Source of the DNA: Octopus bimaculoides
Taxonomy: Eukaryota
DNA length: 64,000 bases
Reading direction: 5' to 3'
Assembly: GCF_001194135.2 (NCBI RefSeq)
Contig: NC_068986.1
Span: 70,925,833 to 70,989,832 of the forward strand
A model generated the notes under the pieces. It saw only the letters and a list, made by a program, of their open reading frames with translations, had not been told where the DNA came from and ran no database searches. The position numbers were made by a program, and so were the translations under genes. This document shows, in pieces, positions 47,080-64,000 of the stretch (within the stretch, counting starts at the first letter, position 1; each line of letters begins with the position of its first letter).

Positions 47080-47735
47080 TAGTCTCTGCTATGCCGCATC
47101 TGTAATAGAATGGACGAAACCATTGCCCATATCGCGAACGAATGCCCTAGACTTGCCCAAAACCACTAAAAGTTGTGGCGACACGATCAGGTAGCGAAAG
47201 TGCTACATTGGAAATTGTGTGAAAAGTGGGGGCTAGAGAGAGGCAAGATGTGGTATGAGTACAAATTGCAGAGAGTGGCGGAGTCGGAGACTTGCAAAAT
47301 CTTCTGGGATTTCCCAATCCAAACAGATCAGGTGCTAGAGAGCATAACAGACAGGACCTAGTGGCAGTCGACAAGGTGCACCACGTGCTATATAGTTGAT
47401 GTTGCGTGCTTCTTGGACTCACGAATAGTCAAGAAGGAAGGCGAATCCACTTAAGTACGAAATAGCCCGGTTATGGAAAATGAAGAAGGTGAAGATAGTG
47501 CCAATTATTGTTGACTCCTTGGGGACAGTACCAGAAGGTATCAAGAGGAATATAAAGGAAATCGGAATGGGGTGCCAAGTAGAAGTATTACAAAAGGTTT
47601 GCATCCTTGGCACGACCAAAATAATCAGGAAAGTATTAGATAGCTGAAAGAACAGATAGCATGGTACCGTAGGCTGCAGGCAGCAAGCCCGCTACGCATG
47701 CAAGACTCCAGGAGTTCCGACAAAAACTTGTGACA
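47080..47735 (+). mobile_element. R4/Dong-like non-LTR retrotransposon 3' fragment, copy 1
   Basis: CCHC knuckle CRICNRMDETIAHIANEC, RHDQVAKVLHWKLC, WDFPIQTD, RLE motifs, IVPIIVDSLG, VLDS* (TGA 47645-47647). Preceded by (TAA)n. Confidence 0.85.
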
Positions 47736-49089
47736 AAAAGAAAAAAAAAATGATTTCAAATTTTGGCACAAGGCCATCAATTTCAGGGGAGGGGAAGTCG
47801 ATTATATCGACTCCAGTGTTCAACTGGTACTTATTTTATCAACCCCAAAAGGATGAACGGTGAAATCGACCATTATTTTACCGGCATCTGTTTTGATATT
47901 AAGATTGAAAAAAAATCGACTTTATTTGTAAAAGAGTTTGTACCTGGGTTTGTAACCCCCAAGCAAATTTTGTTCCTGCTCTTATGTTGTCAGCTTACCA
48001 GAATCAGGTACTGCAACGGCTTATATGTTTTCATTCAGGTGAACAGGGTCATTCCAAGAAGTATGTTGGTTATAGATACAGCATTGATACGATCTAAAGA
48101 TTTTTCGAGGAGTTAGCTGATATCGCATCAACTTCTGTCACTACGTCTATCAAGCGTTGCTCATTCTGTTACTTCAGCTTATAGCAATAATTTCATTATA
48201 ACTATCTTTACATTTATATCACTACAACGATGTAACATATGGTTCAGTACTCACAGTACTGATCTACACACATAGAAAAACATTATTAATATAATCGGTT
48301 ATTAACTCTTCATATAGTGAGATTATTATAATTTATTACAAAAATATTCACAAAAATTCGACCATAATTGCGACTCTAGCATTTAAGATCTAATGATTGC
48401 TAATATTTAGTCTCATAAATTACTAGAACCAACAATAATGAGTAACTTGTCTTTAGGGCAATTCATTTATCTTGCTTGATCAAATTAGGTCTACTACGGT
48501 TGAAAACGATCAAATAACCGAGGCAATCAATGTTGGCTCGTATTTCTTGGCACAGAGTATTGTATACCAATGAGGAAACTGTACATCATAATTTCCTGAT
48601 ATATTTGTAACTATATTGGTTTTACTTCCTTTAAGAACTGGGCATTTACTCCACTTCAGTATTAATGGGTGATAGGAACAAGAAATAACATCCAATCTTT
48701 TCAAGATTGATTTTTAAGCACATACGAATGCTCAGTGTTGTACACCATTAGTGCAACACTTCAAGGACCATGTCAAAACGCGCACTTCATTAGAGTTTAG
48801 CTTTATCCTCATTTTCTGTCTTTTGATACCAGATTTGCTTTTATCAAAACTTGTAACGTTAAATACACTTTTTAAAATTATCTTTTGACAAAGATTCATG
48901 AATATTTCAGTAGCATATACATTATAACTTTGAATCTATATTCATGCAGTTTCGAATAAATCATAACAAAGTAATATGAAGCATGCCTACATACATACAT
49001 ACATACATACACACACACACATGTGGATGTGTGTATTCACCCCATTCAGTCGACGAGCGTAGGCTCGAAACGTAAAAGACTTCCATTTT

Positions 49090-50045
49090 TCCCGAGTAGT
49101 TTTCTTTTTCGTTGTTCGAAAAAAAGTTCGCTTTCTATGTTTTTGTTATTTATGTTCTCATTTCTCATTCTGTTCACGTTTTTTGATGTCCTGTACTCAT
49201 ATATGCATGTATATATACATATATTTGTAGTTATGTACATATATGTATATATATATGCATATATTTATATATTATTTATATTATTATATGATCGAACGCC
49301 ATGCATCCTTTTCCAAGTAAGTTTTATCTTCTTAATTACAATGCGCACTCTTATTCTATCTTTTCTGTCTATCTGCCTCCCTCTCTTGTTCTTCTTCCTT
49401 TCTGTTTTTCTCTCCCACCCTTTCCCTATTCTTCTCCTCTCCCCTTCACCGTTCCCTCTCTCTCTCTAACTCTTCCTCCTTGACTCTCTCGTGACTAACG
49501 GCCATTCTCTCTTTCTTCCACTTCCGTCCTAAAGACAAGACGTGCTTTTATCTGTCTCTTCTCAAAGCTCGTTTTCCAAGCATTCACTACTTCACATCGT
49601 CTTGGTTTAACGGCCCTTACCGTTTGCTTTTACTGTTTTGTTCTCACTGCCCTGTTTTTGTTACCACTTTCACCCCCGGCAAAAAATCCCATATTTTTTA
49701 TTTAATTTGCTTTGTGGGTAGGATTGTTTTAACAAAGTCGCGTCTTGTCGTTACCTTCGAAACGCGGAGTAGATAAAACAGGGGACAACTGATGAAGAGA
49801 ATGTTCTTTATGTTGCATGTTTCGTTTCTCTGTTTTTGTTTCGTTGTTCAACAAAAAGTTCGTATTCGATGTTTTTGTTTTTTATGTTCTCATTTCTCAT
49901 TCTGTCCGTTTTTTGATGTCCTGTACTCATATATGCATGTATATACACGTATATATAAGTATGTACATATATGTATGTATATATGCATATATTTATATAT
50001 ATATATAGGCGTGTACATATATGTATGTACATATGCATATATTTA
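49090..50045 (+). mobile_element. Non-coding, terminally redundant ~730-bp element carrying a hammerhead-like motif (copy 1)
   Basis: About 49090-49265 repeats at about 49830-50045 (anchor GATGTCCTGTACTCATATATGCATG at 49185 and 49915). Homologous throughout to 58480-59335. Confidence 0.8.
49724..49799 (+). ncRNA. Candidate non-circularly permuted hammerhead ribozyme, copy 1
   Basis: CGCGU-C-UUGUC (49739-49749), CUUC-GAA-ACGCG (49755-49766), GACAA-CUGAUGA-AGAG (49784-49799). Stems I and III pair perfectly; first pair of stem II is A-C. Confidence 0.7.
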
Positions 50046-50158
50046 TTGTAGTTCATTGCCATATAATGAGTAAATTTATGGTTCATAAGTTAGTTTCATA
50101 AGTGACATGAACGAAACTTTCGGTTGTTGAATCACTATTGTAACTTTTCGCCGAGTAA

Positions 50159-50232
<74 letters not shown>

Positions 50233-51559
50233 ACACACACACATGCATATATGCATACACAATACATACATGCAAACACATATGCAGCACTATTTTTAGC
50301 TAGAGTCAACTACTAAACGTTAATCTTATAATATTGCACGTCAATACAAATGGAAGCCTATTTTTTTTAGTTGCCTAGATACAAATTTAATATTTACAAA
50401 CTAGGGGAATGAAATTATTGCTTTATAGTCGTTTGTATTCCAAGAAACAGCAATTGCTCATTCGCAACGATTTGGTAAATATTATTAGTGCTTTTCAGCC
50501 GCAATATATCGAACGTCTTTCTATTTATACATCTCATATTGATTTTACGATTATAATATACTCTAAAAGTCTTAACAAAATTACTGAAGATTGAAATAAA
50601 ATAAAAAAGAAAGAAAATTACTTTCCGCGTTCCATTATATTAATAAGGTATGTCTAATGGGGTTGAAACAGCGAAGCATCCATACAATTTTGACAATAAT
50701 AAAATCCGTGGTCTTCTCCTAGTACAAGAGACTAAATTTTTTTAAGATCAATTCTAAATTGAATCTTCTTCAGACACTGAAAATATCATGAATATCGTAT
50801 TGTCGTCGCTGGTACAATACATATATACACACGAGTGAGTGAACAAACGAAAGAAAGTAGCATTCAACACATTTGGTAGGAGTTACGTATAGTTTAATAA
50901 CAGCTTGATTCAGCTTTAGATGATTTTTAACGTTTCATGAGCACGTAATACCAGCTCATCTTATGAGATGCTAGATGCCGAGACTTTACGCCAAGCATCT
51001 AAGCAGATGGACTTGTCCCAGGCGCTTAGGAAGCTTTGAGTCATGTGGAGATGAGTCAAGCCGTTATCAAAAATATAGCCATATACAGGCGCAGCTACGT
51101 TGTAAGAAGCCTGCTTCTCAACCACTTGACTTCGGTACAGTTCCACTGCGTGGTACCTTGGGCAAGTGTTTCTACTATATCCTCGGCCGACCAAAGCTTT
51201 GTGAGTGGATTTGGTAGACGGAAACTGAAAGAAACCCGTCGTATACTTGCATTTATATACATATATATGCCTATGTGTGTCTGTGTGTGACTGTGTGTGA
51301 CTGTGTGTGTGTGTCTTGTATACAAATGCAGTCCAATAATGGCTTCTAAGTCACTGTCAAAATGAAAACTTCTTTTTATTATAACGTAAAAGCAAGCGTT
51401 AATATATATGTACATATGTATATATATGTATATATATATGTATATATATATATACAAAGGGGTTTGAATGATTGTGTATAGAAGAATATAGAATATATTA
51501 CTCAAAGGAATTCCAACTCTGTCTGTTTTTCACGTTTTATCTATAATCTTATAATATTA

Positions 51560-51745: not shown

Positions 51746-52535
51746 AATTACAACAACAGAAGTTGCTGGAAAGCATAGGTGAGATTGGCTGAAGAAAGGA
51801 ACACTGAAAAAAAATACTGAGAGCACTAAACTGGTAGCGCAGAACCAAGCTTTGGCCACGAAGTGGAGGGTCAACCCCAGAAATGAGCAAGTGTCTCCGC
51901 TGTGCCGCATCTATAACAGAGTAGATGAAACCATTGCCCGTATCGCGAACGAATGCCCAAGACTTACCCAAAACCACTACAAGTTGTGGTGACACGATCA
52001 GGTAGCGAAAGTGCTACATTGGAAATTGTGTGAAAAGTGGGGGCTAGAGGGAGGCAAGACATGGTGGAGTCGGTGACTAGCAAAATCGTCTGGGATTTCC
52101 CAATCCAAACAGATCAGGTGATAGAGTATAACAGGCCGGACCTAGTGACAGTCGACAAGATGCACCACGTGCTATATAGATGATGTTGCGTGCTTCTTTG
52201 ACTCACGAATAAATAGTCAAGAAGGAAAGCGAAAAAATAGATAAATACAACCCTCTTAAGTACGAAATAGCCCGGTTATGGAAAATGAAGAAGATGAAGA
52301 TAGTGCCAATTGTTGTTGGCTCCTTGGGGACAGTATCAGAAGGCATCAAGAGAAATATAAAGGAAATCGGAATAAAGTGTCGAGTAGAAGTATTACAAAA
52401 GGTTTACCTCCTTGGCACGGCCAGAATAATCAGGAAAATATTAGATAGCTGAAAGAACAGATAGCATGGTACCGTAGGCTGCAGGCAGCAAACCTGCTAT
52501 GCATGCAAGCACCAAGAATTCTAACAAAACCATGA
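51745..52535 (+). mobile_element. R4/Dong-like non-LTR retrotransposon 3' fragment, copy 2
   Basis: WLKKGTLKK...AQNQALAT...SPLCRIYNRVDETIARIANEC...; highly similar to copy 1; TGA 52450-52452; followed by (TAAA)n(TAA)n. Confidence 0.85.
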
Positions 52536-52545
52536 TAAAAATAAA

Positions 52546-52615
<70 letters not shown>

Positions 52616-56559: not shown

Positions 56560-58310
56560 AAGAAAAAGGCTTGTCAACATCATTGGATGCAAACGAAGTC
56601 GCAGGTGTTACATCAGAGTTTTCCTTCTTCAGAGTTTTCCTTCTAAATGGCTACGAGAAATTTATCTCTCCTAGTCGGCGGGGCGGTAGCGTGGTGGTCC
56701 TATTCAGGAAAAACTTGGACGTGCAGTTAAGTGCAGTTTTTCTAGACCCAGAAGGTAGGTTGGTCGTTCTAGATTTGACACACGCGAGTAAACAGTCCTT
56801 CAGGTTGATAGCTGTCTACGCTCCAAATAAGTGTAGGCAGGCTGGTTTTTAACGGGACCTGGAGAGTTCCTTAGTGACGTCAAAAACTCTAGTTGTACTT
56901 GGAGACTTTAACACTATTCTCGACGCACGGGTGGATAGTGTTGGCTCGGCTGATAGAAAGGAAAATCCTGACCTCAAAAGGCTACTAGAGAGCTATAATC
57001 TAGTAGACCGGTATAGACTGGATGAGCCGCTCGTTCCACAGTGGACGTGGTCTAATAACGACGGTTCATACAGATCTTATTTAGATAGGATTATTATTAG
57101 AGATACAGACAAGGATACTGTTAGTTGCCCACACTTTTGTTGTGTCCCCTACACGGACAACAAGTTTGTGACGTGTAAGGTGTACCTAGTTAAGTGTCAT
57201 AGACAGGCACCTGGGTTCTGAAAGATGAACAAATCTACTTTGACTTGTAAAACCTTCCGTGCTCGGGTTAAAGAGTTGGTGCAGAGGGCATTAACAGGTG
57301 CCATTATCAATAATAGGTAGTGGTGCGCCCCCAAACGAGCCATTCGTTCTGAGTCTATTAGATTTAGCAAGCAGTTAAGTCTAGATAAGACTAGAATAGA
57401 AGGGAGTTACGTAAGGAATTAGATGAAGGTCTGGCTCTGCTTCTAGAGTGTTGGTGACCAAACACGAAGGATGTAAGGTCAGAACTAAACTTCGTACGGT
57501 GGGAAGAGAAGGTATTAGCGTTACCGGATGGGCACGTGGTGTGGAAAGTCGGAGAGGTAGAGAAGCCTCTATTAAGCCTTACAGACGAACAGAGGTGTTC
57601 GATGGAAGGACAAGAGGAGATGCGAAAGACTTTTCATCAGCATTTCGCCCGGTTGTTCGGGAGGAGCGGCGAGTTGGACCGTGGGGAGCCCCTAAGGGAT
57701 TTCCTCACCGGTGGGCTGCGACTCTTGGCATGAGAGGCGGAATGCTGTGAAGGATCGATTACGGCTACAGAGGTTGAAGAGGTACTGGCTGAGTGCGCCA
57801 GAGACAAATCGCCGGGACTGTAGTATGCCGGACTTGTACGGGCACTTGCTGGCCTGCGTCTACACAAACTGGTAGCAGAATGGGAGGATTCCCAGTTCTG
57901 TGAGTCGGAAAGTGGTGACGCTGATCAGAAAAGACCCGAACAAGGGGGATCATATCAATAATTTTAGGCCCATAGCTCTACTTAATGTAGAGTTAAAGAT
58001 TTTGGCCAAGGTGCTAGCTAAGAGGTTAGTGCGTATCGCGGAGAAACTTGTTGAGAGGGCGCAGACGTGCCATCCCAGGCAGGTCGATCCAGGAAATCTT
58101 CATCTCCTGCGCTACACCTTAGACAGGGTGGGTAAATTATCCGGTAAAGGTGGGTCACTGGTCCATTTAAACCAAAGTAAAGCTTTTGATGGGGTAGATC
58201 ACCAGTGCCTGAATGCAGTCCTCGAGGCAGCTGGGCTGGGCCCAGACTTCTGTGGCTGGGCCCAGACTTCTGTGGCTGGGCCCAGACTTCTGTGGCTGGA
58301 TCCCTGCCAT
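56560..58310 (+). mobile_element. Tx1/L1-like LINE ORF2 remnant (APE endonuclease plus RT N-terminal half), interrupted
   Basis: GRLVVLD...FRLIAVYAPN, LVVLGDFN, QWTWSN...SYLDRI, LIRKDPNKGDHINNFRPIALLNVELKILAKVLAKRL, LNQSKAFDGVDH; several stops and frameshifts. Confidence 0.9.
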
Positions 58311-58396
58311 AAGTACAGGACATTAAGAAAAACGTTAAACACAATGAGNNNNNNNNNNTGGCTGGGCCCAGACTTCTGTGGCTGGATCCCTGCCAT

Positions 58397-59335
58397 AAGT
58401 ACAGGACATTAAGAAAAACGTTAAACACAATGAGAAACGAAAACATAAAAACGAAAACAGAAAACGAACGTTTTACCAATGTATGCATGTATGTATACAT
58501 ATAGATGAGGTATGTACATATATGTATGGATATATGCATATATTTCTATATTTTTATATTATTATATGATCGAACGCTACGCATCCTTTTCCAAGTAAGT
58601 TTTATCTTAATAATTACAATGCGCACCCTACTGCTATCTCTTCCCTGTCTGTCTCTCTCCCTCTCTTGTTCTTCTTCCTTTCTGTTTTTCTCTCCCATCC
58701 TTTCCCTGTTCTTTTCTCCCTTTCACCGTTCCCTCTCTCTCTCTCTCATTCTTCCTCCTTGACCCTCTCGTCGCTCACATGAGACGAAAGGGGGATCTCT
58801 CTTTCTGTTCACTGCCTTCCTATAGAAAAGACGTGTTGTTTCTGTCTCTTCTCTCATGCACGACTATCTAGCGTTCAAAATAATATTTTTTCTATCGCCT
58901 TGGCTTAACAGCCCTCACTGTTTGTTTTTACTGTCTTGTTCTCACTGTCCTGTTCTTACTGTTTTTACTGTCTTGTTCTCACTGTCCTGTTCTTGTTAAC
59001 ACTTTCACCCTCCGCAAAATATTCCAAATTTTATTTAATTTGCTTTGCGGTAAGGACTGTTCCAACGAAGTCGCGTATTGTCCTTGCCTTCGAAACTCGG
59101 AGTAGATGGAACAGGGACAACCGACGAGGGGATACACTCTTTTTGTTGCATGTCTCGTTGCTCTGTTTTTTTTCGTTGCTCGAAAAAAGTTCGTTTTCTG
59201 TATTCGTTTTTATGTTTTCGTTTCTCATTGTGTTTAACGTTTTTCTTGATATCCTGTACCCATGCGTGCATGTATGTATACATATAGATGTAGGTATGTA
59301 CATATATGTATGGATATATGCATATATTTATCTAT
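58397..59335 (+). mobile_element. Hammerhead-bearing non-coding element, copy 2, with an inverted 5' segment
   Basis: 58397-58474 is the reverse complement of about 59184-59260; direct repeat anchors at 58484 and 59267 (period 783 bp); homologous to 49090-50045. Confidence 0.8.
59057..59131 (+). ncRNA. Candidate non-circularly permuted hammerhead ribozyme, copy 2
   Basis: CGCGU-A-UUGUCC (59072-59083), CUUC-GAA-ACUCG (59088-59099), GGACAA-CCGACGA-GGGG (59115-59131). U4 is changed to C and stem III has one mismatch. Confidence 0.65.
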
Positions 59336-59353
59336 TATTTATATATATATACA

Positions 59354-59397
<44 letters not shown>

Positions 59398-59639
59398 GAC
59401 GGGCTTCTTTCAATTTCTGTCTATCAAATCCACTCACAAGGCTATTGGTCGGCTCGAGGCTATTGTGAAAGGCACTCGTCCAAGATGCCACGCAGTGGGA
59501 CTGAACCCAGAACCATGTAGTTGGAAAGCAAGCTGCTTACCACACAGCCACGCCTGCGTCTATGTAAATGCTTTAAATATTTTTTAAAATCAAAACTGCA
59601 AGTTTAAAAAAATTAATAATACACGTATGTGGTTACTAC

Positions 59640-60160
59640 TGTTACCTGGTATTTCAATATTTCAAGGTTAGGACCCCTTCTTCAGGAAATTTAGGAAGAA
59701 AAAGGTGTTGATAGCTGACTTCTCTGCTCTCTAGTGTGTGTGTAGGAAGTGTTGTTTTGCGTTGCTATAATATGCAATCAGCTGCGTGCAGTTCAGATCC
59801 CTCATTAAGTCGCGGGCTATACTTGTTAATTAAAATAGCTTAATTTATTCTCAAGCTTCCAATGTTTCTTCCAGTAGTTTTAATGGAAACTTGGATGTCT
59901 TAGGAGTGATATTTCCGTAGGTGCTTTATGACGGAAGGAGCATTTGCATGGGGGATGTTCTTTAGCCCGTATGTGAACTTGTCTGATGAAACTTCTACAT
60001 TTGCTACACCTAATTATATACACCACCCAGAAGGTATATATATATATATTTTCATCTCTGATCCTGAAGTTGGACAATGTACATAAGGTGTTGCTTTGTC
60101 GCAGTCTGTTTTTAGTGAGGATCCTCAGGAAAGGTTCGGAGTATAGGATATCAATGAACA
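59640..60160 (-). mobile_element. Penelope-like element 3' fragment (GIY-YIG endonuclease plus 3' region)
   Basis: LRILTKNRL...VVYIIRCSKC...HIRAKEH...LRIN*AILINKYSPRLN. Confidence 0.75.
59651..59690 (-). ncRNA. Minimal type I hammerhead ribozyme candidate at the Penelope-like 3' end
   Basis: Minus strand AUUUC-CUGAAGA-AGGG-GUCCUAA-CCUU-GAA-AUAU-U-GAAAU: 5-bp stem I, intact core, 4-bp stem II, palindromic AUAU stem III, AUU cleavage triplet. Confidence 0.7.
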
Positions 60161-60660
60161 TATAAAATTTGAAGTGGAACACCTCAATAACACCGATTCC
60201 TTATCTCTGCTTGATTTTGAGCTACAAACCACAGAGAACGTATCGATTTCCACAAACATTTCAGAAAGGCAGCATGCAGGGGCCTATTTTTTACATCATA
60301 ATTCACCCTTGCTTATTAGAGCAACGATGGCCTACATTAGAAATGAAATCCACAGGATGATTTGTAGATGCAGCGATGCAGGAAGCAAATGCACCAACTC
60401 CATACGATTTTAAAAAATCCTGATGACTATGCATACTCTTTCATTAAATACAAGGGCATCGCTAGATCACTTAACAAAATCCACACTTTCAAGGATAACG
60501 TGATTTTTTTGAACTTGCCACATTTTAACGAACAAATAACTGTTGCAATCCGCTTTGCGACCTGTAAAGGAGAGATTGAATATACAACCTGAGGTTCATT
60601 ATTGAAAACGGACCGAGACAAAGTAACACCTTATGTACATTGTCCAAATACCCGGTCAGA
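60150..60660 (+). mobile_element. Penelope-like RT thumb/linker fragment, opposite orientation to the adjacent EN fragment
   Basis: NEHIKFEVEHLNNTDSLSLLDF...FLHHNSP...IRNEIHRMICRCS...ILKNPDDYAYSFIK...FLNLPHFNEQI. Confidence 0.7.
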
Positions 60661-60674
60661 AATGAAAATGGAAA

Positions 60675-60952
60675 AATATTTGCCTTGTGTTATTACTTGT
60701 TCCAATCCATGTTTCACTTCCTGCGATCGCGACGCTTCATCAACCAAGAAGACGTGGAAGCTTCAATGAAGGAATTCTTCGCTTCGAAGGACAAGAACTG
60801 GTATCAGTGTGGGATCAAAGAACTGGCAGAAAGGTAGCTTCAGACGGTGCAACACGATGACCTCTACATTAAATGCCAGGTTGCTTTTGTTGTAACTTGA
60901 ATAAAGTAAATAAGTTACTAAAATATTGCAAAACTTTTTACTCAGCACAATA
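60675..60952 (+). mobile_element. Mariner transposase 3' fragment with right TIR
   Basis: YYLFQSMFHFLRSRRFINQEDVEASMKEFFASKDKNWYQCGIKELAER*LQTVQHDDLY; ends CAAAACTTTTTACTCAGCACAATA. Confidence 0.85.
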
Positions 60953-63054
60953 TTTAATTCATCCTAATATTTCAGGTATAATAGATGTTTTGAAAAATGT
61001 TAAGAAAAAGAGAGAAATATGTCCGTTCGCCTGGAATGTTCAGAAACAGATGCCATGCAAACAGATGATTTCTTTCTTGTTTTCTAAACACTTTTGTAAA
61101 GAGGTATTTTACTCGAAATATCAGGACTATTGGTTTACCTTTCACGCCAAACGTGCTCTGCCTAGATGAAATATTTCCAAGTGGGAACAATCAAACCTGC
61201 ACCCTAAATACTAGCCTTCCTTTACAAATTTAGCAAGTACTTGTGCTCAGAACTGTTGCCAACTTTCTCCATAGCTGAAGTTGCACATTGGGGTACTGCC
61301 CAAACATCCGGGATGAGAGTACTGCTGCACACAGAAAAAATTCTAGGCCTCATCAAAATAAAACCATTATACTTATTGAATAAAAAATAATTTAACATAC
61401 TTCAACCGCTTACCATAAACATACTAACCCCGCAGCCAGCCTTTTATGCAAATATAACGACTTCGGCTCCTCAGAGCTAGCTATTCGCATTCTATCTATA
61501 CCTATACACATACGGCTCACTTATTTTCCCACCCGTCTCCAACCTTTGTATATCTCATCTCATTTCGAATTTCTAAGCAAGGGACAATGTGCCAAACACA
61601 CATAGGTGTTGTGAAGTTGGGGAACACTTCCATTGAATTCACTTTGGGATACTAAACGACAAAGATGCCACCTAATGTTTAAATATACTTTTCGAACAGG
61701 GTTACCTCAACGATAGCCACTAAATACTCGTGAGCAACTCGGCGAATGAATTTTTACGGATCTAAATGGATTAAATTTCTTTTAAAGCTATATGTTGATT
61801 AAACCATCCCCACAGTGTATCAACACGAGATGGAGGTTCGTCTGATTGGTCTTGATGGATCAATAAGTTTGTGCAAATGCGATACTGTTAACCAAGGTAT
61901 GTTTTTCGACTTTTATGATGATGATTGACTTTTATTACGTATGGTTGTAATTATACATTACAGACTAAGATTTTAATGTAATGGTATTACACATAATAAA
62001 TATGCATCTGAGGCAGAAAAAGGGGAACAAGACCCCTGAAGCGGCTCAACTCCTGTGTTACAGAATGACTATCATTATCTCTATCAAATTAGCAACTATA
62101 AGTGATTTTCAGCGCTACATAAATACCACTTGTTTCATATATAATTTGTCAGCCACTTATCACTTGCTCAGTAACCTATTCAACAAGTGATAATAGCCTC
62201 TTAGCAGGTGTTCTACCCCCGTTCGATCTATGAACCCTATAAATATGTATAATTTATGAATTAACGGCAAATCTATTTATTTTACAGCTATGGCTGAGAC
62301 AATAAAACCATGGAATGTTCACGCTGTGCAGGCTACAGCGTTGCAACAAGAAACGAACCCAAAACTATTTGATTGCAACAGGCAAGACTGAATAGTTAGT
62401 AATTTGTTTCGCAATCATGAAGCTTCGTGTTTCACATCACTATCCGACTCATTGGACAATTGCTCTCGGTGATAGCTTCGTGTTCGTCCCACCAGAGTAG
62501 ATAAAAACAACTCTACATGCCCATGAAAAATTGTCAGCTGAAGAATAATTGTAATTTTAGGGGTTAAACTTGTAACAATGTCATGTTGAGTCTCGTAGAG
62601 AACTACATCGAGAATACAAAGGAAATATCCATCCACTTACATTTAATACAATGGGCAGGTAGGTAGATGATAGAACAATTGCAAAACTGATCATTATTTC
62701 GGCACACTGCGCTCATGTCATTTACAATAATCTCGGATTGCAAATCAGTGTAAATGCAATGCGGTACTTACTAGTCTAAAGAGTTGTAACTAAATAATGA
62801 GGCAAACTTTGTAATTCGACAGAATTACTAAAATTAATACCAGACTAAGTTGATATAATACTTTCGAAGACAGTGCCCCAGCATAGCCTTAGTTGAATGA
62901 CTGAAACTAATAGACTGATATGCATGTATGTATGTATGTATGTATGTATGTATGTATGTATGTATGTGTGTATGTATGTATGTATGTATGTGTGTATGTA
63001 TGTATGTATGTATGTATGTATGGATATCATTAACCTCACAAAGGCCAGAGTAAT

Positions 63055-64000
63055 ATTTACTCCTCCTCCAGGCTAACCTCATGTCGATCCAAACATAACA
63101 GTTGACGGTATACGGTTCGATAGGTTTCCATATCTTGAAAGCATTATCGGTAAATACTGATCACTTGATACAGAAATCAATCAGAGAATTCAAAATGCCA
63201 CTTTATCATTTGGAAAACTAAAGAAAAAGCTACAAGAGTATCGGGTTTTCAACTTGTAATTATATTGTATACAGATCATGCGTACTAACTGTATTGTATG
63301 TATCTGAAGAGGAGGACAACCTTCAGGTGGCACATGAAATGGCCTGAAAGGTTTCACATTGAATTTTAATTCTGGATTGAAATCTCCTGGAATTTACTCT
63401 GTTTTCTTCCTTTCGCAAGAGTCATTTGAGCTCTGCATGTTCAATATTTGCTTCAAATTCCCCGCAACCAACTTTAATTATACAACGGCAACCTGATATG
63501 TTCTTTACTAAGGACTCTCAATTTCTAATGTCCTCAGAATCTTCAAGTTATCCTTAGCTGCATGTATGAATCGCATTTAACTGAAGTGAACTTTTTTGAA
63601 ACCAGATACGGATGTACTGAGGAGAGCCGGCTGTGAAAGTATTGAGATGATTACTAACAATCAAATGCATTGGACTGGTTGTGTCAGGATAGACGATACC
63701 AGATTACCCAAGAGGTCGCTTTATGGACAACTTTCAAATAAAAAGAGGCCAAATCATAAACCAAACAAGCGATTCGAAGATGTAGTTAAGAACAGTTTTA
63801 ATATTCTGAATTTTATATTAGAAATTGGAATCCTTTGCAAAGAACAGAACAGGCTGGCTTCGTATGATTAAAGAAGTTTGCGAGAAGTTTGAGGCAAAGC
63901 GTATTTACATGCAGAGTTCAAGAGATCATTGCAAAAGGGATAAAACAGAATTTAAATTCAATGTATGCAACAAAGTATTGCTTTCTAGAAGCGGTCTCGT
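63055..64000 (+). mobile_element. RTE/BovB-like LINE 3' portion, decayed, runs off the window
   Basis: DPNITVDG...FPYLES...EINQRIQNATLSFGKL...PDTDVLRRAGCESIE...QMHWTGCVRIDDTRLPKRSLYGQL...KPNKRFEDVVK. Confidence 0.85.

What the first reader, a model, noticed from the sequence alone, without database searches (positions are those of the whole stretch)
49724..49799. Hammerhead ribozyme core in a non-circularly permuted (pseudoknotted) strand order
Seen: three hammerhead strands. X = CGCGU-C-UUGUC (stem III 5', GUC cleavage triplet, stem I 5'; 49739-49749). Z = CUUC-GAA-ACGCG (stem II 3', GAAA, stem III 3'; 49755-49766). Y = GACAA-CUGAUGA-AGAG (stem I 3', core, stem II 5'; 49784-49799). Their order is X-Z-Y. 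Established: types I, II and III are all circular permutations of X-Y-Z, so X-Z-Y fits none of them. Here a 5-nt linker joins the end of stem I to the end of stem II, which is plausible because those two helices pack side by side in the active fold. Inference: a self-cleaving RNA with unusual topology, likely missed by standard hammerhead models. From memory (not verified), natural non-circular hammerhead permutations have been reported, so the novelty may be the host lineage and element rather than the topology. This copy has A instead of G at position 10.1 and may be impaired.
Basis: partly seen in the sequence, partly recalled or inferred. Interest (0 to 1): 0.9.

Follow-up and report, generated by a model that had tools for sequence, protein, structure and literature searches.

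The report
Probable chance hammerhead look-alike in octopus repeat
A 61-base stretch in an octopus repeat spells the three parts of a hammerhead ribozyme in the rearranged "type-SGC" order published in 2023, but one stem is too weak, the only sister copy breaks the catalytic core, and it is conserved no better than its flanks, so it is more likely a look-alike than a working ribozyme.

Summary
Their order, cleavage-site block, then GAAA block, then CUGAUGA block, is not new. It is the "type-SGC" non-circular hammerhead permutation of Eckert et al. 2023 (PMC10085705), so far known only from metatranscriptomes.

For a ribozyme:
- Stems I and III are perfect (5 bp each) and the motif spans only 61 nt.
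- It is the top hit in the window of a model I built from 16 published type-SGC ribozymes, but only at 14.3 bits, E about 0.1.
- It lies on the sense strand near the 3' end of a ~730-bp tandem or inverted-arranged repeat, a layout like the Penelope-type retroelements that carry hammerheads in animals.

Against:
- Stem II is 3 weak pairs plus an A·C mismatch at 10.1/11.1, with no net stability.
- The stem I/II clamp helix of known SGC ribozymes is not clearly present.
- A competing hairpin sequesters the core.
- The only paralogue (77% identical) reads CCGACGA and has a mismatch in stem III.
- The motif is 82% identical between copies, like its flanks (80-83%).
- Matches of this quality arise by chance in 0.4-5% of such windows.

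No further family copies could be retrieved. The window shares repeat families (up to 96% identity) with a locus of Octopus bimaculoides.

I put a real, at least ancestral, ribozyme at about 0.17.

The parts
49739..49749 (+). Block S: stem III 3' strand CGCGU, C17 (49744, predicted cleavage 3' of it), stem I 5' strand UUGUC
   Evidence: descriptor hit
49750..49754 (+). 5-nt linker GUUAC joining the distal ends of stems I and II. Published type-SGC ribozymes typically have 3 nt here.
49755..49766 (+). Block G: stem II 3' strand CUUC, G12-A13-A14, stem III 5' strand ACGCG
49784..49799 (+). Block C: stem I 3' strand GACAA, CUGAUGA core, stem II 5' strand AGAG (A at 10.1)
49725..49780 (+). Hairpin 1. 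Helix A (49725-49731 with 49774-49780) encloses the stem III hairpin. Helix A shows two compensatory U-A to C-G changes in copy 2.
   Evidence: Significance is only modest: 13 of 300 column shuffles do as well.
49782..49823 (+). Competing hairpin 2. It pairs the stem I 3' strand, the CUGAUGA core and AGAG with downstream U/G-rich sequence. Energy is -7.6 kcal/mol in copy 1 and -16.7 in copy 2. All paired columns stay paired in both copies.
49198..50026 (+). Repeat unit, copy 1: an AT/GT-rich 'M' segment (49198-49290), the body (49291-49928), then the next M (49929-50026). The period is about 732 bp.
49101..49197 (+). Direct, 5'-truncated upstream partial unit, equivalent to the 3' end of the body (49833-49928)
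58475..59393 (+). Repeat unit, copy 2, about 77% identical to copy 1. Its motif is at 59072-59131: CGCGU-A-UUGUC / CUUC-GAA-ACUCG / GACAA-CCGACGA-GGGG.
58385..58474 (-). Inverted, 5'-truncated partial unit (3' end of the body) abutting copy 2. It lies next to an assembly gap.
60147..60410 (+). Remnant of a Penelope-like element ORF. Its homologues carry RVT_1 followed by a C-terminal GIY-YIG domain. It lies about 750 bp downstream of copy 2, on the same strand.

Best explanation
The hammerhead letters are most likely a fortuitous or long-dead composite, not a working ribozyme.

They lie in the 3' part of a ~730-bp non-coding repeat in an octopus-like genome. The repeat occurs as partial tandems and with an inverted truncated copy, which suggests a retroelement-derived, possibly Penelope-like, non-autonomous element.

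Shown:
- The 61-nt motif matches the published type-SGC hammerhead layout in stems I and III and in all core letters.
- Stem II is essentially unstable.
- The paralogue breaks core position 4 and stem III.
- The motif is no better conserved than its flanks.

Inferred:
- As RNA, the region would fold into two ordinary hairpins, 49725-49780 and 49782-49823, and the second would sequester the CUGAUGA core.
- The T's of CTGATGA in copy 1 may come from CpG to TpG decay of an ancestral CCGACGA.
- No self-cleavage occurs at C49744.
For: Chance level:
- 0.05 hits per window for the descriptor, from shuffles and from scrambled-core decoys.
- 0.004-0.011 per window for compact hits.
- A model built from 16 published HRIMA-1 ribozymes gives only 14.3 bits, E about 0.11, and misses copy 2.

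Structure:
- Stem II duplex energy is +0.5 (copy 1), 0.0 (copy 2) and -0.8 (best-of-both) kcal/mol. A published HRIMA-1 example has -6.2.
- 10.1/11.1 is A.C.
- Competing hairpin 2 is -7.6 and -16.7 kcal/mol, with every pair kept in both copies. The two T/C core sites read U.G in copy 1 and C-G in copy 2.

Paralogue:
- Copy 2 reads CCGACGA and ACUCG.
- Identity is 82% over the motif and 80-83% in the flanks. The best-conserved part of the unit is its 5' region, at 87-93%.
- CpG observed/expected is 0.50. Copy 2 holds the CpG at 8 of 10 CG/TG/CA sites, including both core sites.

Rfam 15 gives no hammerhead hit. Eckert et al. searched RefSeq with such patterns, expected false positives, and accepted none from genomes of known organisms.
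Against: - The motif is very compact (61 nt) and is the best match in 128 kb of sequence (both strands) to a model trained on real type-SGC ribozymes.
- It sits on the sense strand near the 3' end of a repeat with a Penelope-like layout: partial tandem, inverted truncated copy, TA-rich junctions. That is the context in which animal hammerheads occur. Only about 1% of the window-plus-strand space is such sequence.
- Of 11 differences between the copies, 9 fall where a hammerhead tolerates change: H17 C/A, the linker, the loop, N7, and 10.3 A-U to G.U. At 10.1, copy 2 has the canonical G. A best-of-both ancestor would therefore be a formally complete hammerhead.
- Both copies are probably dead elements, so their defects do not exclude an active ancestor.
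Confidence: 0.62

Rival explanations
1. It descends from a genuine type-SGC (non-circularly permuted) hammerhead carried by a Penelope-like or retrozyme-like tandem repeat. In transcripts of tandem units, the ribozyme would cut once per ~730-nt unit, 3' of the GUC/GUA triplet. Both copies in the window are decayed: copy 1 through A10.1, copy 2 through C4 and U15.3.
For: - All blocks are in SGC order, with 5-bp stems I and III and a short I-II linker.
- It is the top hit of the HRIMA-1 model in the window.
- With filters off, a possible clamp helix appears: ACAGG 49778-82 with UCUGU 49829-33, present in both copies.
- The substitution pattern is mostly hammerhead-tolerated, and 10.1 is G in copy 2.
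- Helix A extends stem III and covaries.
- The repeat has a tandem or inverted layout, and a Penelope-like element remnant lies nearby.
- Craig et al. 2021 report that some Penelope-like elements without a canonical hammerhead carry core halves that do not fit the descriptors, with the second half 'on either side'.
Against: - Stem II is marginal even in the best-of-both consensus, at -0.8 kcal/mol.
- The candidate clamp helix lies 29 nt away and overlaps helix A.
- There is no covariation in stems I, II or III.
- The motif is no better conserved than its flanks.
- U4 in copy 1 may derive from CpG decay.
- Only two copies are available.
- The one octopus Penelope-like element examined carries a degenerate canonical type-I-like motif, not an SGC one.
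Confidence: 0.17
2. The conserved feature is an ordinary structured 3' module of a retroposon. Hairpin 1, with or without hairpin 2, would be used for recognition by the reverse transcriptase of its autonomous partner. The hammerhead letters would be incidental to that structure.
For: - Helix A has two compensatory pairs.
- All 32 pairs of the nested two-hairpin consensus are kept in both copies, five of them through one-sided wobble changes.
- 5'-truncated copies retain the 3' end of the unit.
Against: - Folding energies are not unusual: z = -0.15 and -1.19.
- Covariation as strong as that in helix A arises in 13 of 300 column shuffles.
- G/U-rich sequence pairs promiscuously.
- No partner element was identified.
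Confidence: 0.15
3. It is a relic of a rearranged canonical (type I, Penelope-style) hammerhead. In this reading GAAAC-NCGGA-GUA (49759-49771) would be a G block with a minimal stem III and its own cleavage triplet. Helix A would be its stem I. The original C block would have been lost, and a second C block left downstream.
For: - GAAAC-(G/U)CGGA-GUA is followed by GA-UAAAACA, which pairs with UGUUUUA upstream. That helix covaries.
- It resembles GAAAC-UCGA-GUU of the hammerhead-like string in the octopus Penelope-like element locus L014.
Against: - No CUGANGA-like core lies between the would-be stem I 3' strand and the G block (AAAGUCG / GAAGUCG).
- The similarity to L014 is not significant: 82 of 300 shuffles score as well.
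Confidence: 0.06

Closest known systems
Type-SGC hammerhead ribozymes (HRIMA-1 motif and type-SGC variants; Eckert, Friedrich, Weinberg and Weinberg, NAR 2023, PMC10085705)
   Same: - Same block order: cleavage site, then GAAA, then CUGANGA.
- A 5-bp stem I.
- A short linker from stem I straight into stem II.
- Compact size of about 55-80 nt.
- The cleavage site lies at the 5' edge.
- All core letters are present in copy 1.
- A model built from 16 published members ranks this site first in the window.
   Different: - Known members have a GC-rich 5-bp stem II with G10.1-C11.1. Here there are 3 weak pairs plus A.C.
- Known members have a 4-9-bp clamp helix directly after stems III and II, which was needed for cleavage in SGC-3. 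Here the only candidate is 5 bp and sits 29 nt away.
- Known members show covariation in all stems. Here there is none.
- Known members come only from metatranscriptomes, probably circular RNA replicons associated with hairpin ribozymes. This one is DNA-encoded in an animal repeat.
- The stem I sequence differs: UUGUC/GACAA here, invariant AUGUU/AACAU in HRIMA-1.
Hammerheads of Penelope-like elements and animal non-LTR retrozymes (Cervera and de la Pena 2014, as cited in PMC8557442; Craig et al. 2021, PMC8557442; Li et al. 2026 bioRxiv 10.64898/2026.07.22.740005)
   Same: - Genomic context: a repeat arranged as a partial tandem, with an inverted 5'-truncated copy upstream.
- TA-rich junctions.
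- The motif lies near the 3' end on the sense strand.
- A remnant of a Penelope-like element with a C-terminal GIY-YIG domain is adjacent.
   Different: - Those hammerheads are canonical type I with a minimal stem III, and standard descriptors or Rfam models detect them.
- Here the order is non-circularly permuted and no canonical hammerhead is present.
- No sequence homology between the unit and a Penelope-like element was shown.
Structured 3' ends of retroposons that serve in recognition by a partner reverse transcriptase (stringent LINE/SINE pairs; from my own knowledge)
   Same: - A conserved stem-loop close to the 3' end of a non-coding retroposon-like repeat.
- 5'-truncated copies keep the 3' end.
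- A microsatellite-like sequence follows the body.
   Different: - No partner LINE shares this 3' end in the window.
- The tandem or inverted layout is more Penelope-like than LINE-like.

Membership tests
Type-SGC hammerhead ribozyme | Blocks in the 5'-3' order S (cleavage site), G (GAAA), C (CUGANGA) | tested here: met
   Blocks at 49739-49749, 49755-49766 and 49784-49799. Definition.
Type-SGC hammerhead ribozyme | Invariant core: C3 U4 G5 A6 N7 G8 A9, G12 A13 A14, A15.1-U16.1, and H17 not G | tested here: inconclusive
   Copy 1 has all of them. Copy 2 has C at position 4, reading CCGACGA. With only two copies the ancestral state is open, and CpG decay favours C.
Type-SGC hammerhead ribozyme | Stem II of about 4-6 pairs that begins with G10.1-C11.1 | tested here: not met
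   Copy 1 has A.C, G.U, A-U and G-C, with a duplex energy of +0.5 kcal/mol. Copy 2 scores 0.0 and a published example -6.2.
Type-SGC hammerhead ribozyme | Stems I and III formed next to the core | tested here: met
   Both are 5/5 pairs in copy 1. In copy 2, stem I is 5/5 and stem III is 4/5 with a central U.C mismatch.
Type-SGC hammerhead ribozyme | Short linker (typically 3 nt) from the stem I 5' strand to the stem II 3' strand | tested here: met
   5 nt in both copies: GUUAC and CUUGC.
Type-SGC hammerhead ribozyme | Helix joining the other sides of stems I and II (required for cleavage in SGC-3) | tested here: inconclusive
   No adjacent helix is present. With filters off, the model pairs ACAGG 49778-82 with UCUGU 49829-33 after a 29-nt insert. 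That candidate overlaps helix A and is invariant in both copies.
Type-SGC hammerhead ribozyme | Covariation in stems I, II and III among homologues | tested here: not met
   With two sequences only: stem I is invariant, stem II has one wobble change and one mismatch, and stem III has one break. The only compensatory pairs are in helix A, outside the hammerhead core.
Type-SGC hammerhead ribozyme | Sequence and structure similarity to published members | tested here: inconclusive
   Model R1, built from 16 HRIMA-1 rows, gives 14.3 bits and E about 0.11. This is the top hit of the window. Copy 2 is not found at E up to 10.
Type-SGC hammerhead ribozyme | Site-specific self-cleavage 3' of H17, abolished by a G5 mutation | not testable with these tools
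   Needs an in vitro transcription assay.
Penelope-like element or non-LTR retrozyme (as host element) | Partial tandem (pseudo-LTR) and/or an inverted 5'-truncated upstream copy, with a microsatellite-biased junction | tested here: met
   A direct partial copy lies at 49101-49197 and an inverted partial copy at 58385-58474. TA/TG-rich M segments flank both bodies. Criteria.
Penelope-like element or non-LTR retrozyme (as host element) | Canonical type I hammerhead in the terminal repeat | tested here: not met
   No Rfam hammerhead at gathering score or at E up to 10. My descriptor finds no canonical-order hit in the unit.
Penelope-like element or non-LTR retrozyme (as host element) | Sequence homology of the unit to the terminus of an autonomous Penelope-like element | tested here: not met
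   No similarity was found to the Penelope-like remnant region of the window (nhmmer over the whole window) or to the O. bimaculoides locus L014. Only one octopus element was available.

The most novel reading that the evidence does not exclude
The ~730-bp octopus repeat would be a retrozyme-like, Penelope-related element whose ancestor used a type-SGC hammerhead. That would be the first DNA-encoded, eukaryotic example of a non-circularly permuted ribozyme. It would also hint that 'hammerhead-less' Penelope-like elements may hide permuted hammerheads that canonical descriptors cannot see.
Probability: 0.15. Interest if true: 0.75.

Novelty: not a real feature. Interest (0 to 1): 0.32.

Why it matters
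If real, this would move non-circularly permuted hammerheads from anonymous metatranscriptome RNAs into an animal genome and a mobile element.

It would give a testable answer to a question Craig et al. 2021 left open. Some Penelope-like elements carry hammerhead core halves that fit no descriptor, and this could explain why.

It would also argue that ribozyme surveys should routinely use all six block orders.

As the evidence stands, the case mainly shows how easily a compact, formally complete permuted hammerhead arises by chance. Such matches occur in about 0.4-5% of 64-kb windows. Family-level conservation is therefore indispensable.

Tried and rejected
Searches for more family copies all failed:
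- The translated ORF of copy 2 had no protein hit.
- Exact DNA patterns from the motif found nothing in metagenomes or viral contigs.
- In GTDB genomes the pattern gave 3 unrelated bacterial hits.
- A 22-mer conserved in both copies gave 7 marine metagenome contigs that share only those 22-24 bases.
- nhmmer over the window finds only the two copies.
- 21 kb of O. bimaculoides (L014) and 45 kb of ENA contigs contain no copy.

Other dead ends:
- The LINE reverse transcriptase query reached only 60% identity, in anonymous contigs.
- A stitched query from the Penelope-like ORF remnant found nothing.
- I considered that 49026-49100 is a diverged third copy of the motif region. I rejected this because 272 and 412 of 500 shuffles align as well.
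- I considered homology between the G block and the hammerhead-like string of an octopus Penelope-like element. I rejected this as not significant.
- The canonical type I, II and III readings of the same letters fail. Type I lacks a downstream GAAA and S block. In type II the purine-rich 17 nt between GUA and the core cannot form a stem I hairpin. This follows from direct reading.
- Relaxed descriptor hits elsewhere in the window (near 41.1 kb and 5.5-6.4 kb) are spread out and unconvincing.

Full report
**Observation**

The + strand reads GTCGCGTCTTGTCGTTACCTTCGAAACGCGGAGTAGATAAAACAGGGGACAACTGATGAAGAG.
- Block S: CGCGU-C-UUGUC, 49739-49749.
- Block G: CUUC-GAA-ACGCG, 49755-49766.
- Block C: GACAA-CUGAUGA-AGAG, 49784-49799.

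Stem I (UUGUC/GACAA) and stem III (CGCGU/ACGCG, including A15.1-U16.1) are perfect 5-bp helices. Stem II is A.C, G.U, A-U, G-C. The linker is GUUAC. C17 is 49744.

**Is the topology new?**

No. Eckert et al. 2023 (PMC10085705) divide the hammerhead into the same three blocks. Types I, II and III are CGS, GSC and SCG. They describe "type SGC", the order seen here, as a natural non-circular permutation.
- They report 583 predicted examples: 407 HRIMA-1 and 176 variants.
- Cleavage occurs at the predicted site.
- Stem I runs straight into stem II through a linker of typically 3 nt.
- Apart from one weak GCS candidate, none of their RNAs came from a genome of a known organism.
- They searched RefSeq with pattern descriptors, expected false positives, and kept only alignments with covariation.

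A later full-text search finds no other paper that uses this class.

**Chance**

I wrote a descriptor with the observed stringency: stem I 5/5, stem III 5/5, stem II at least 3/4, all six block orders, both strands, span up to 150 nt.
- It hits only this site in the window.
- It hits 0.0525 times per dinucleotide-shuffled window.
- It hits 0.052-0.054 times per scrambled-core decoy set on the real sequence.
- For compact hits the decoy rate falls to 0.011 at 80 nt or less, and 0.004 at 65 nt or less.

So the site is unusual for one window. At these rates many chance matches would be expected in a genome thousands of times larger than the window.

Rfam 15 gives no hammerhead match at gathering score or at E up to 10. 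A covariance model built from 16 published HRIMA-1 sequences ranks 49738-49808 first in the whole window. The score is only 14.3 bits, E about 0.11 with rough calibration. That model does not find copy 2.

**Structure quality**

- The isolated stem II duplex is worth +0.5 kcal/mol in copy 1, 0.0 in copy 2, and -0.8 in a best-of-both consensus. A published member scores -6.2.
- Published members have a 4-9-bp clamp helix directly after stem III and stem II. Here there is none adjacent. With filters off, the model pairs ACAGG (49778-82) with UCUGU (49829-33) across a 29-nt insert. This candidate overlaps another helix and is invariant in both copies.
- The minimum-energy fold is two ordinary hairpins. 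Hairpin 1 spans 49725-49780: helix A closes a stem-loop whose inner stem is stem III. Hairpin 2 spans 49782-49823 and sequesters the stem I 3' strand, the core and AGAG. Its energy is -7.6 kcal/mol in copy 1 and -16.7 in copy 2.
- Neither fold is more stable than shuffles (z = -0.15 and -1.19).

**The paralogue**

The motif lies in a repeat with a second copy at 58475-59393, 77% identical. Copy 2 reads CGCGU-A-UUGUC / CUUC-GAA-ACUCG / GACAA-CCGACGA-GGGG.

Of the 11 differences, 9 are tolerated by a hammerhead or improve it:
- H17 changes C to A.
- Two differences fall in the linker.
- Three fall in the loop.
- One is at N7.
- 10.1 changes A to G, which restores G-C.
- 10.3 changes from A-U to G.U.

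Two differences are disruptive: U4 to C, and a central stem III mismatch.

A best-of-both ancestor would be formally complete. That keeps the ribozyme hypothesis alive. The other results do not support it:
- Constrained positions differ at 4 of 37 and free positions at 7 of 24, counted by hand on the alignment. The contrast is suggestive only.
- Identity across the motif is 82%, the same as the 80-83% of the surrounding 200 nt. The best-conserved part of the unit is its 5' region, at 87-93%.
- The window is CpG-depleted (observed/expected 0.50). Both T/C core differences are CpG in copy 2 and TpG in copy 1. Copy 2 keeps the CpG at 8 of 10 such sites. CTGATGA may therefore be a product of CpG decay from CCGACGA.
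- In hairpin 2 these same sites read C-G in copy 2 and U.G in copy 1.
- The only compensatory changes are two U-A to C-G pairs in helix A. Helix A is compatible with a hammerhead, as an extension of stem III, but is not specific to it. Covariation of that strength appears in 13 of 300 column shuffles.

**Context**

Shared repeat families point to an octopus-like genome.
- ORF 60147-60410 has homologues with RVT_1 followed by a C-terminal GIY-YIG domain. These are Penelope-like elements.
- One homologue is XP_052834550.1 of Octopus bimaculoides.
- Repeats in the window match that protein's locus at up to 96% identity.

The unit is about 732 bp: an AT/GT-rich M segment plus a 637-bp body with no long open reading frame.
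- At locus 1 it is preceded by a direct partial unit that keeps only the 3' end of the body (49101-49197).
- At locus 2 it is preceded by an inverted partial 3' end (58385-58474).
- M follows each body.

Partial tandems, inverted 5'-truncated upstream copies and TA-rich targets are the hallmark layout of Penelope-like elements. Those elements, and the retrozymes derived from them, are where animal hammerheads live.

Craig et al. also note that some elements lacking a canonical hammerhead carry core halves that fit no descriptor. This context is the main reason I do not dismiss the candidate outright.

I could show no sequence homology between the unit and any Penelope-like element. The one octopus Penelope-like locus I could read carries a degenerate canonical-order hammerhead-like string, not an SGC one.

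**More copies**

Every route to further family members failed. The decisive test, family-wide conservation and covariation, could not be run here.

**Verdict**

- The topology is a published class.
- The claim of a self-cleaving RNA is not supported.

My estimates:
- About 0.62 that the motif is a fortuitous or dead composite in a retroelement-derived repeat.
- About 0.17 that it descends from a real type-SGC hammerhead.
- About 0.15 that the conserved entity is an ordinary structured 3' module, with the hammerhead letters incidental.
- About 0.06 that it is a rearranged relic of a canonical hammerhead.

No step had to be referred.

Noticed in passing
window 49043-49065 (+): The string TCGACGAGCGTAGGCTCGAAACG resembles the C-to-G half of a canonical hammerhead: YYGAYGAG, a stem-loop GAGC-GUAG-GCUC, then GAAAC. 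The core letters deviate. It lies just upstream of the partial unit. It is unique in the window and not significantly homologous to the motif region.
   Followed up: partly
L014 11498-11534 (Octopus bimaculoides CM046602.1): About 370 nt after the stop of a Penelope-like ORF lies CATGACGA-AGGG-AAATAG-CCCT-GAAAC-TCGA-GTT-GCC. This looks like a degenerate canonical type I hammerhead with a minimal, palindromic stem III loop and A in place of C3. Rfam does not report it.
   Followed up: partly
window ~59900-60700 (+); inverted repeat arms 60028-60129 and 60588-60689: A degenerate remnant of a Penelope-like element of the RT plus C-terminal GIY-YIG type. A 102-nt inverted repeat (78% complementary) brackets the ORF piece at 60147-60410.
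   Followed up: partly
window 56853-58290 (+): A LINE remnant with an Exo_endo_phos endonuclease at 56853-57218 and RVT_1 at 57900-58260. It is cut short by a 20-bp tandem repeat (GGCTGGGCCCAGACTTCTGT x3.3, 58234-58299) and by the inverted repeat fragment. The sequence on either side of the N gap at 58349-58358 is duplicated, which suggests an assembly artefact.
   Followed up: partly
window 49317-49535 (+); copy 2 58595-58830: The best-conserved part of the repeat unit contains CCAA|GTAAGT, a long polypyrimidine tract, CTAAC-like branch sites and a conserved YAG. It could be a retained intron, a feature reported for Penelope-like elements. This is sequence reading only.
   Followed up: no
window e.g. 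12110-12299, 17530-17714, 19805-19995, 51086-51268, 59370-59560: A SINE-like repeat family of about 190 bp has at least a dozen copies in the window, at 72-92% identity. It also occurs in the O. bimaculoides locus L013. One copy sits right after copy 2 of the unit.
   Followed up: no
window 47082-47750 and 51893-52552: A pair of ~670-bp direct repeats, 84% identical, brackets copy 1 at about 2 kb on each side. Their nature is unknown.
   Followed up: no
L001-L007 (marine metagenome contigs): The 22-mer CATCCTTTTCCAAGTAAGTTTT, from the conserved 5' part of the unit, occurs exactly in 7 marine metagenome contigs. These share nothing else with the element. I roughly estimated well under one chance match; this was not computed. 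The reason is unexplained.
   Followed up: partly
window 49921-50046, 62918-62980 and other TA/TG microsatellites: Microsatellite-like sequence gives sub-threshold Rfam matches to mir-297, mir-466, mir-3149 and similar families, with E as low as 1e-9 but far below gathering score. These are low-complexity false positives.
   Followed up: yes
window 63590-63868 (+): An ORF piece that, from memory, resembles the C-terminal end of invertebrate LINE reverse-transcriptase ORFs (...RLPKRSLYGQL...KRPNHKPNKRFEDV...). Pfam gave no hit for it. It is unrelated to the finding.
   Followed up: no
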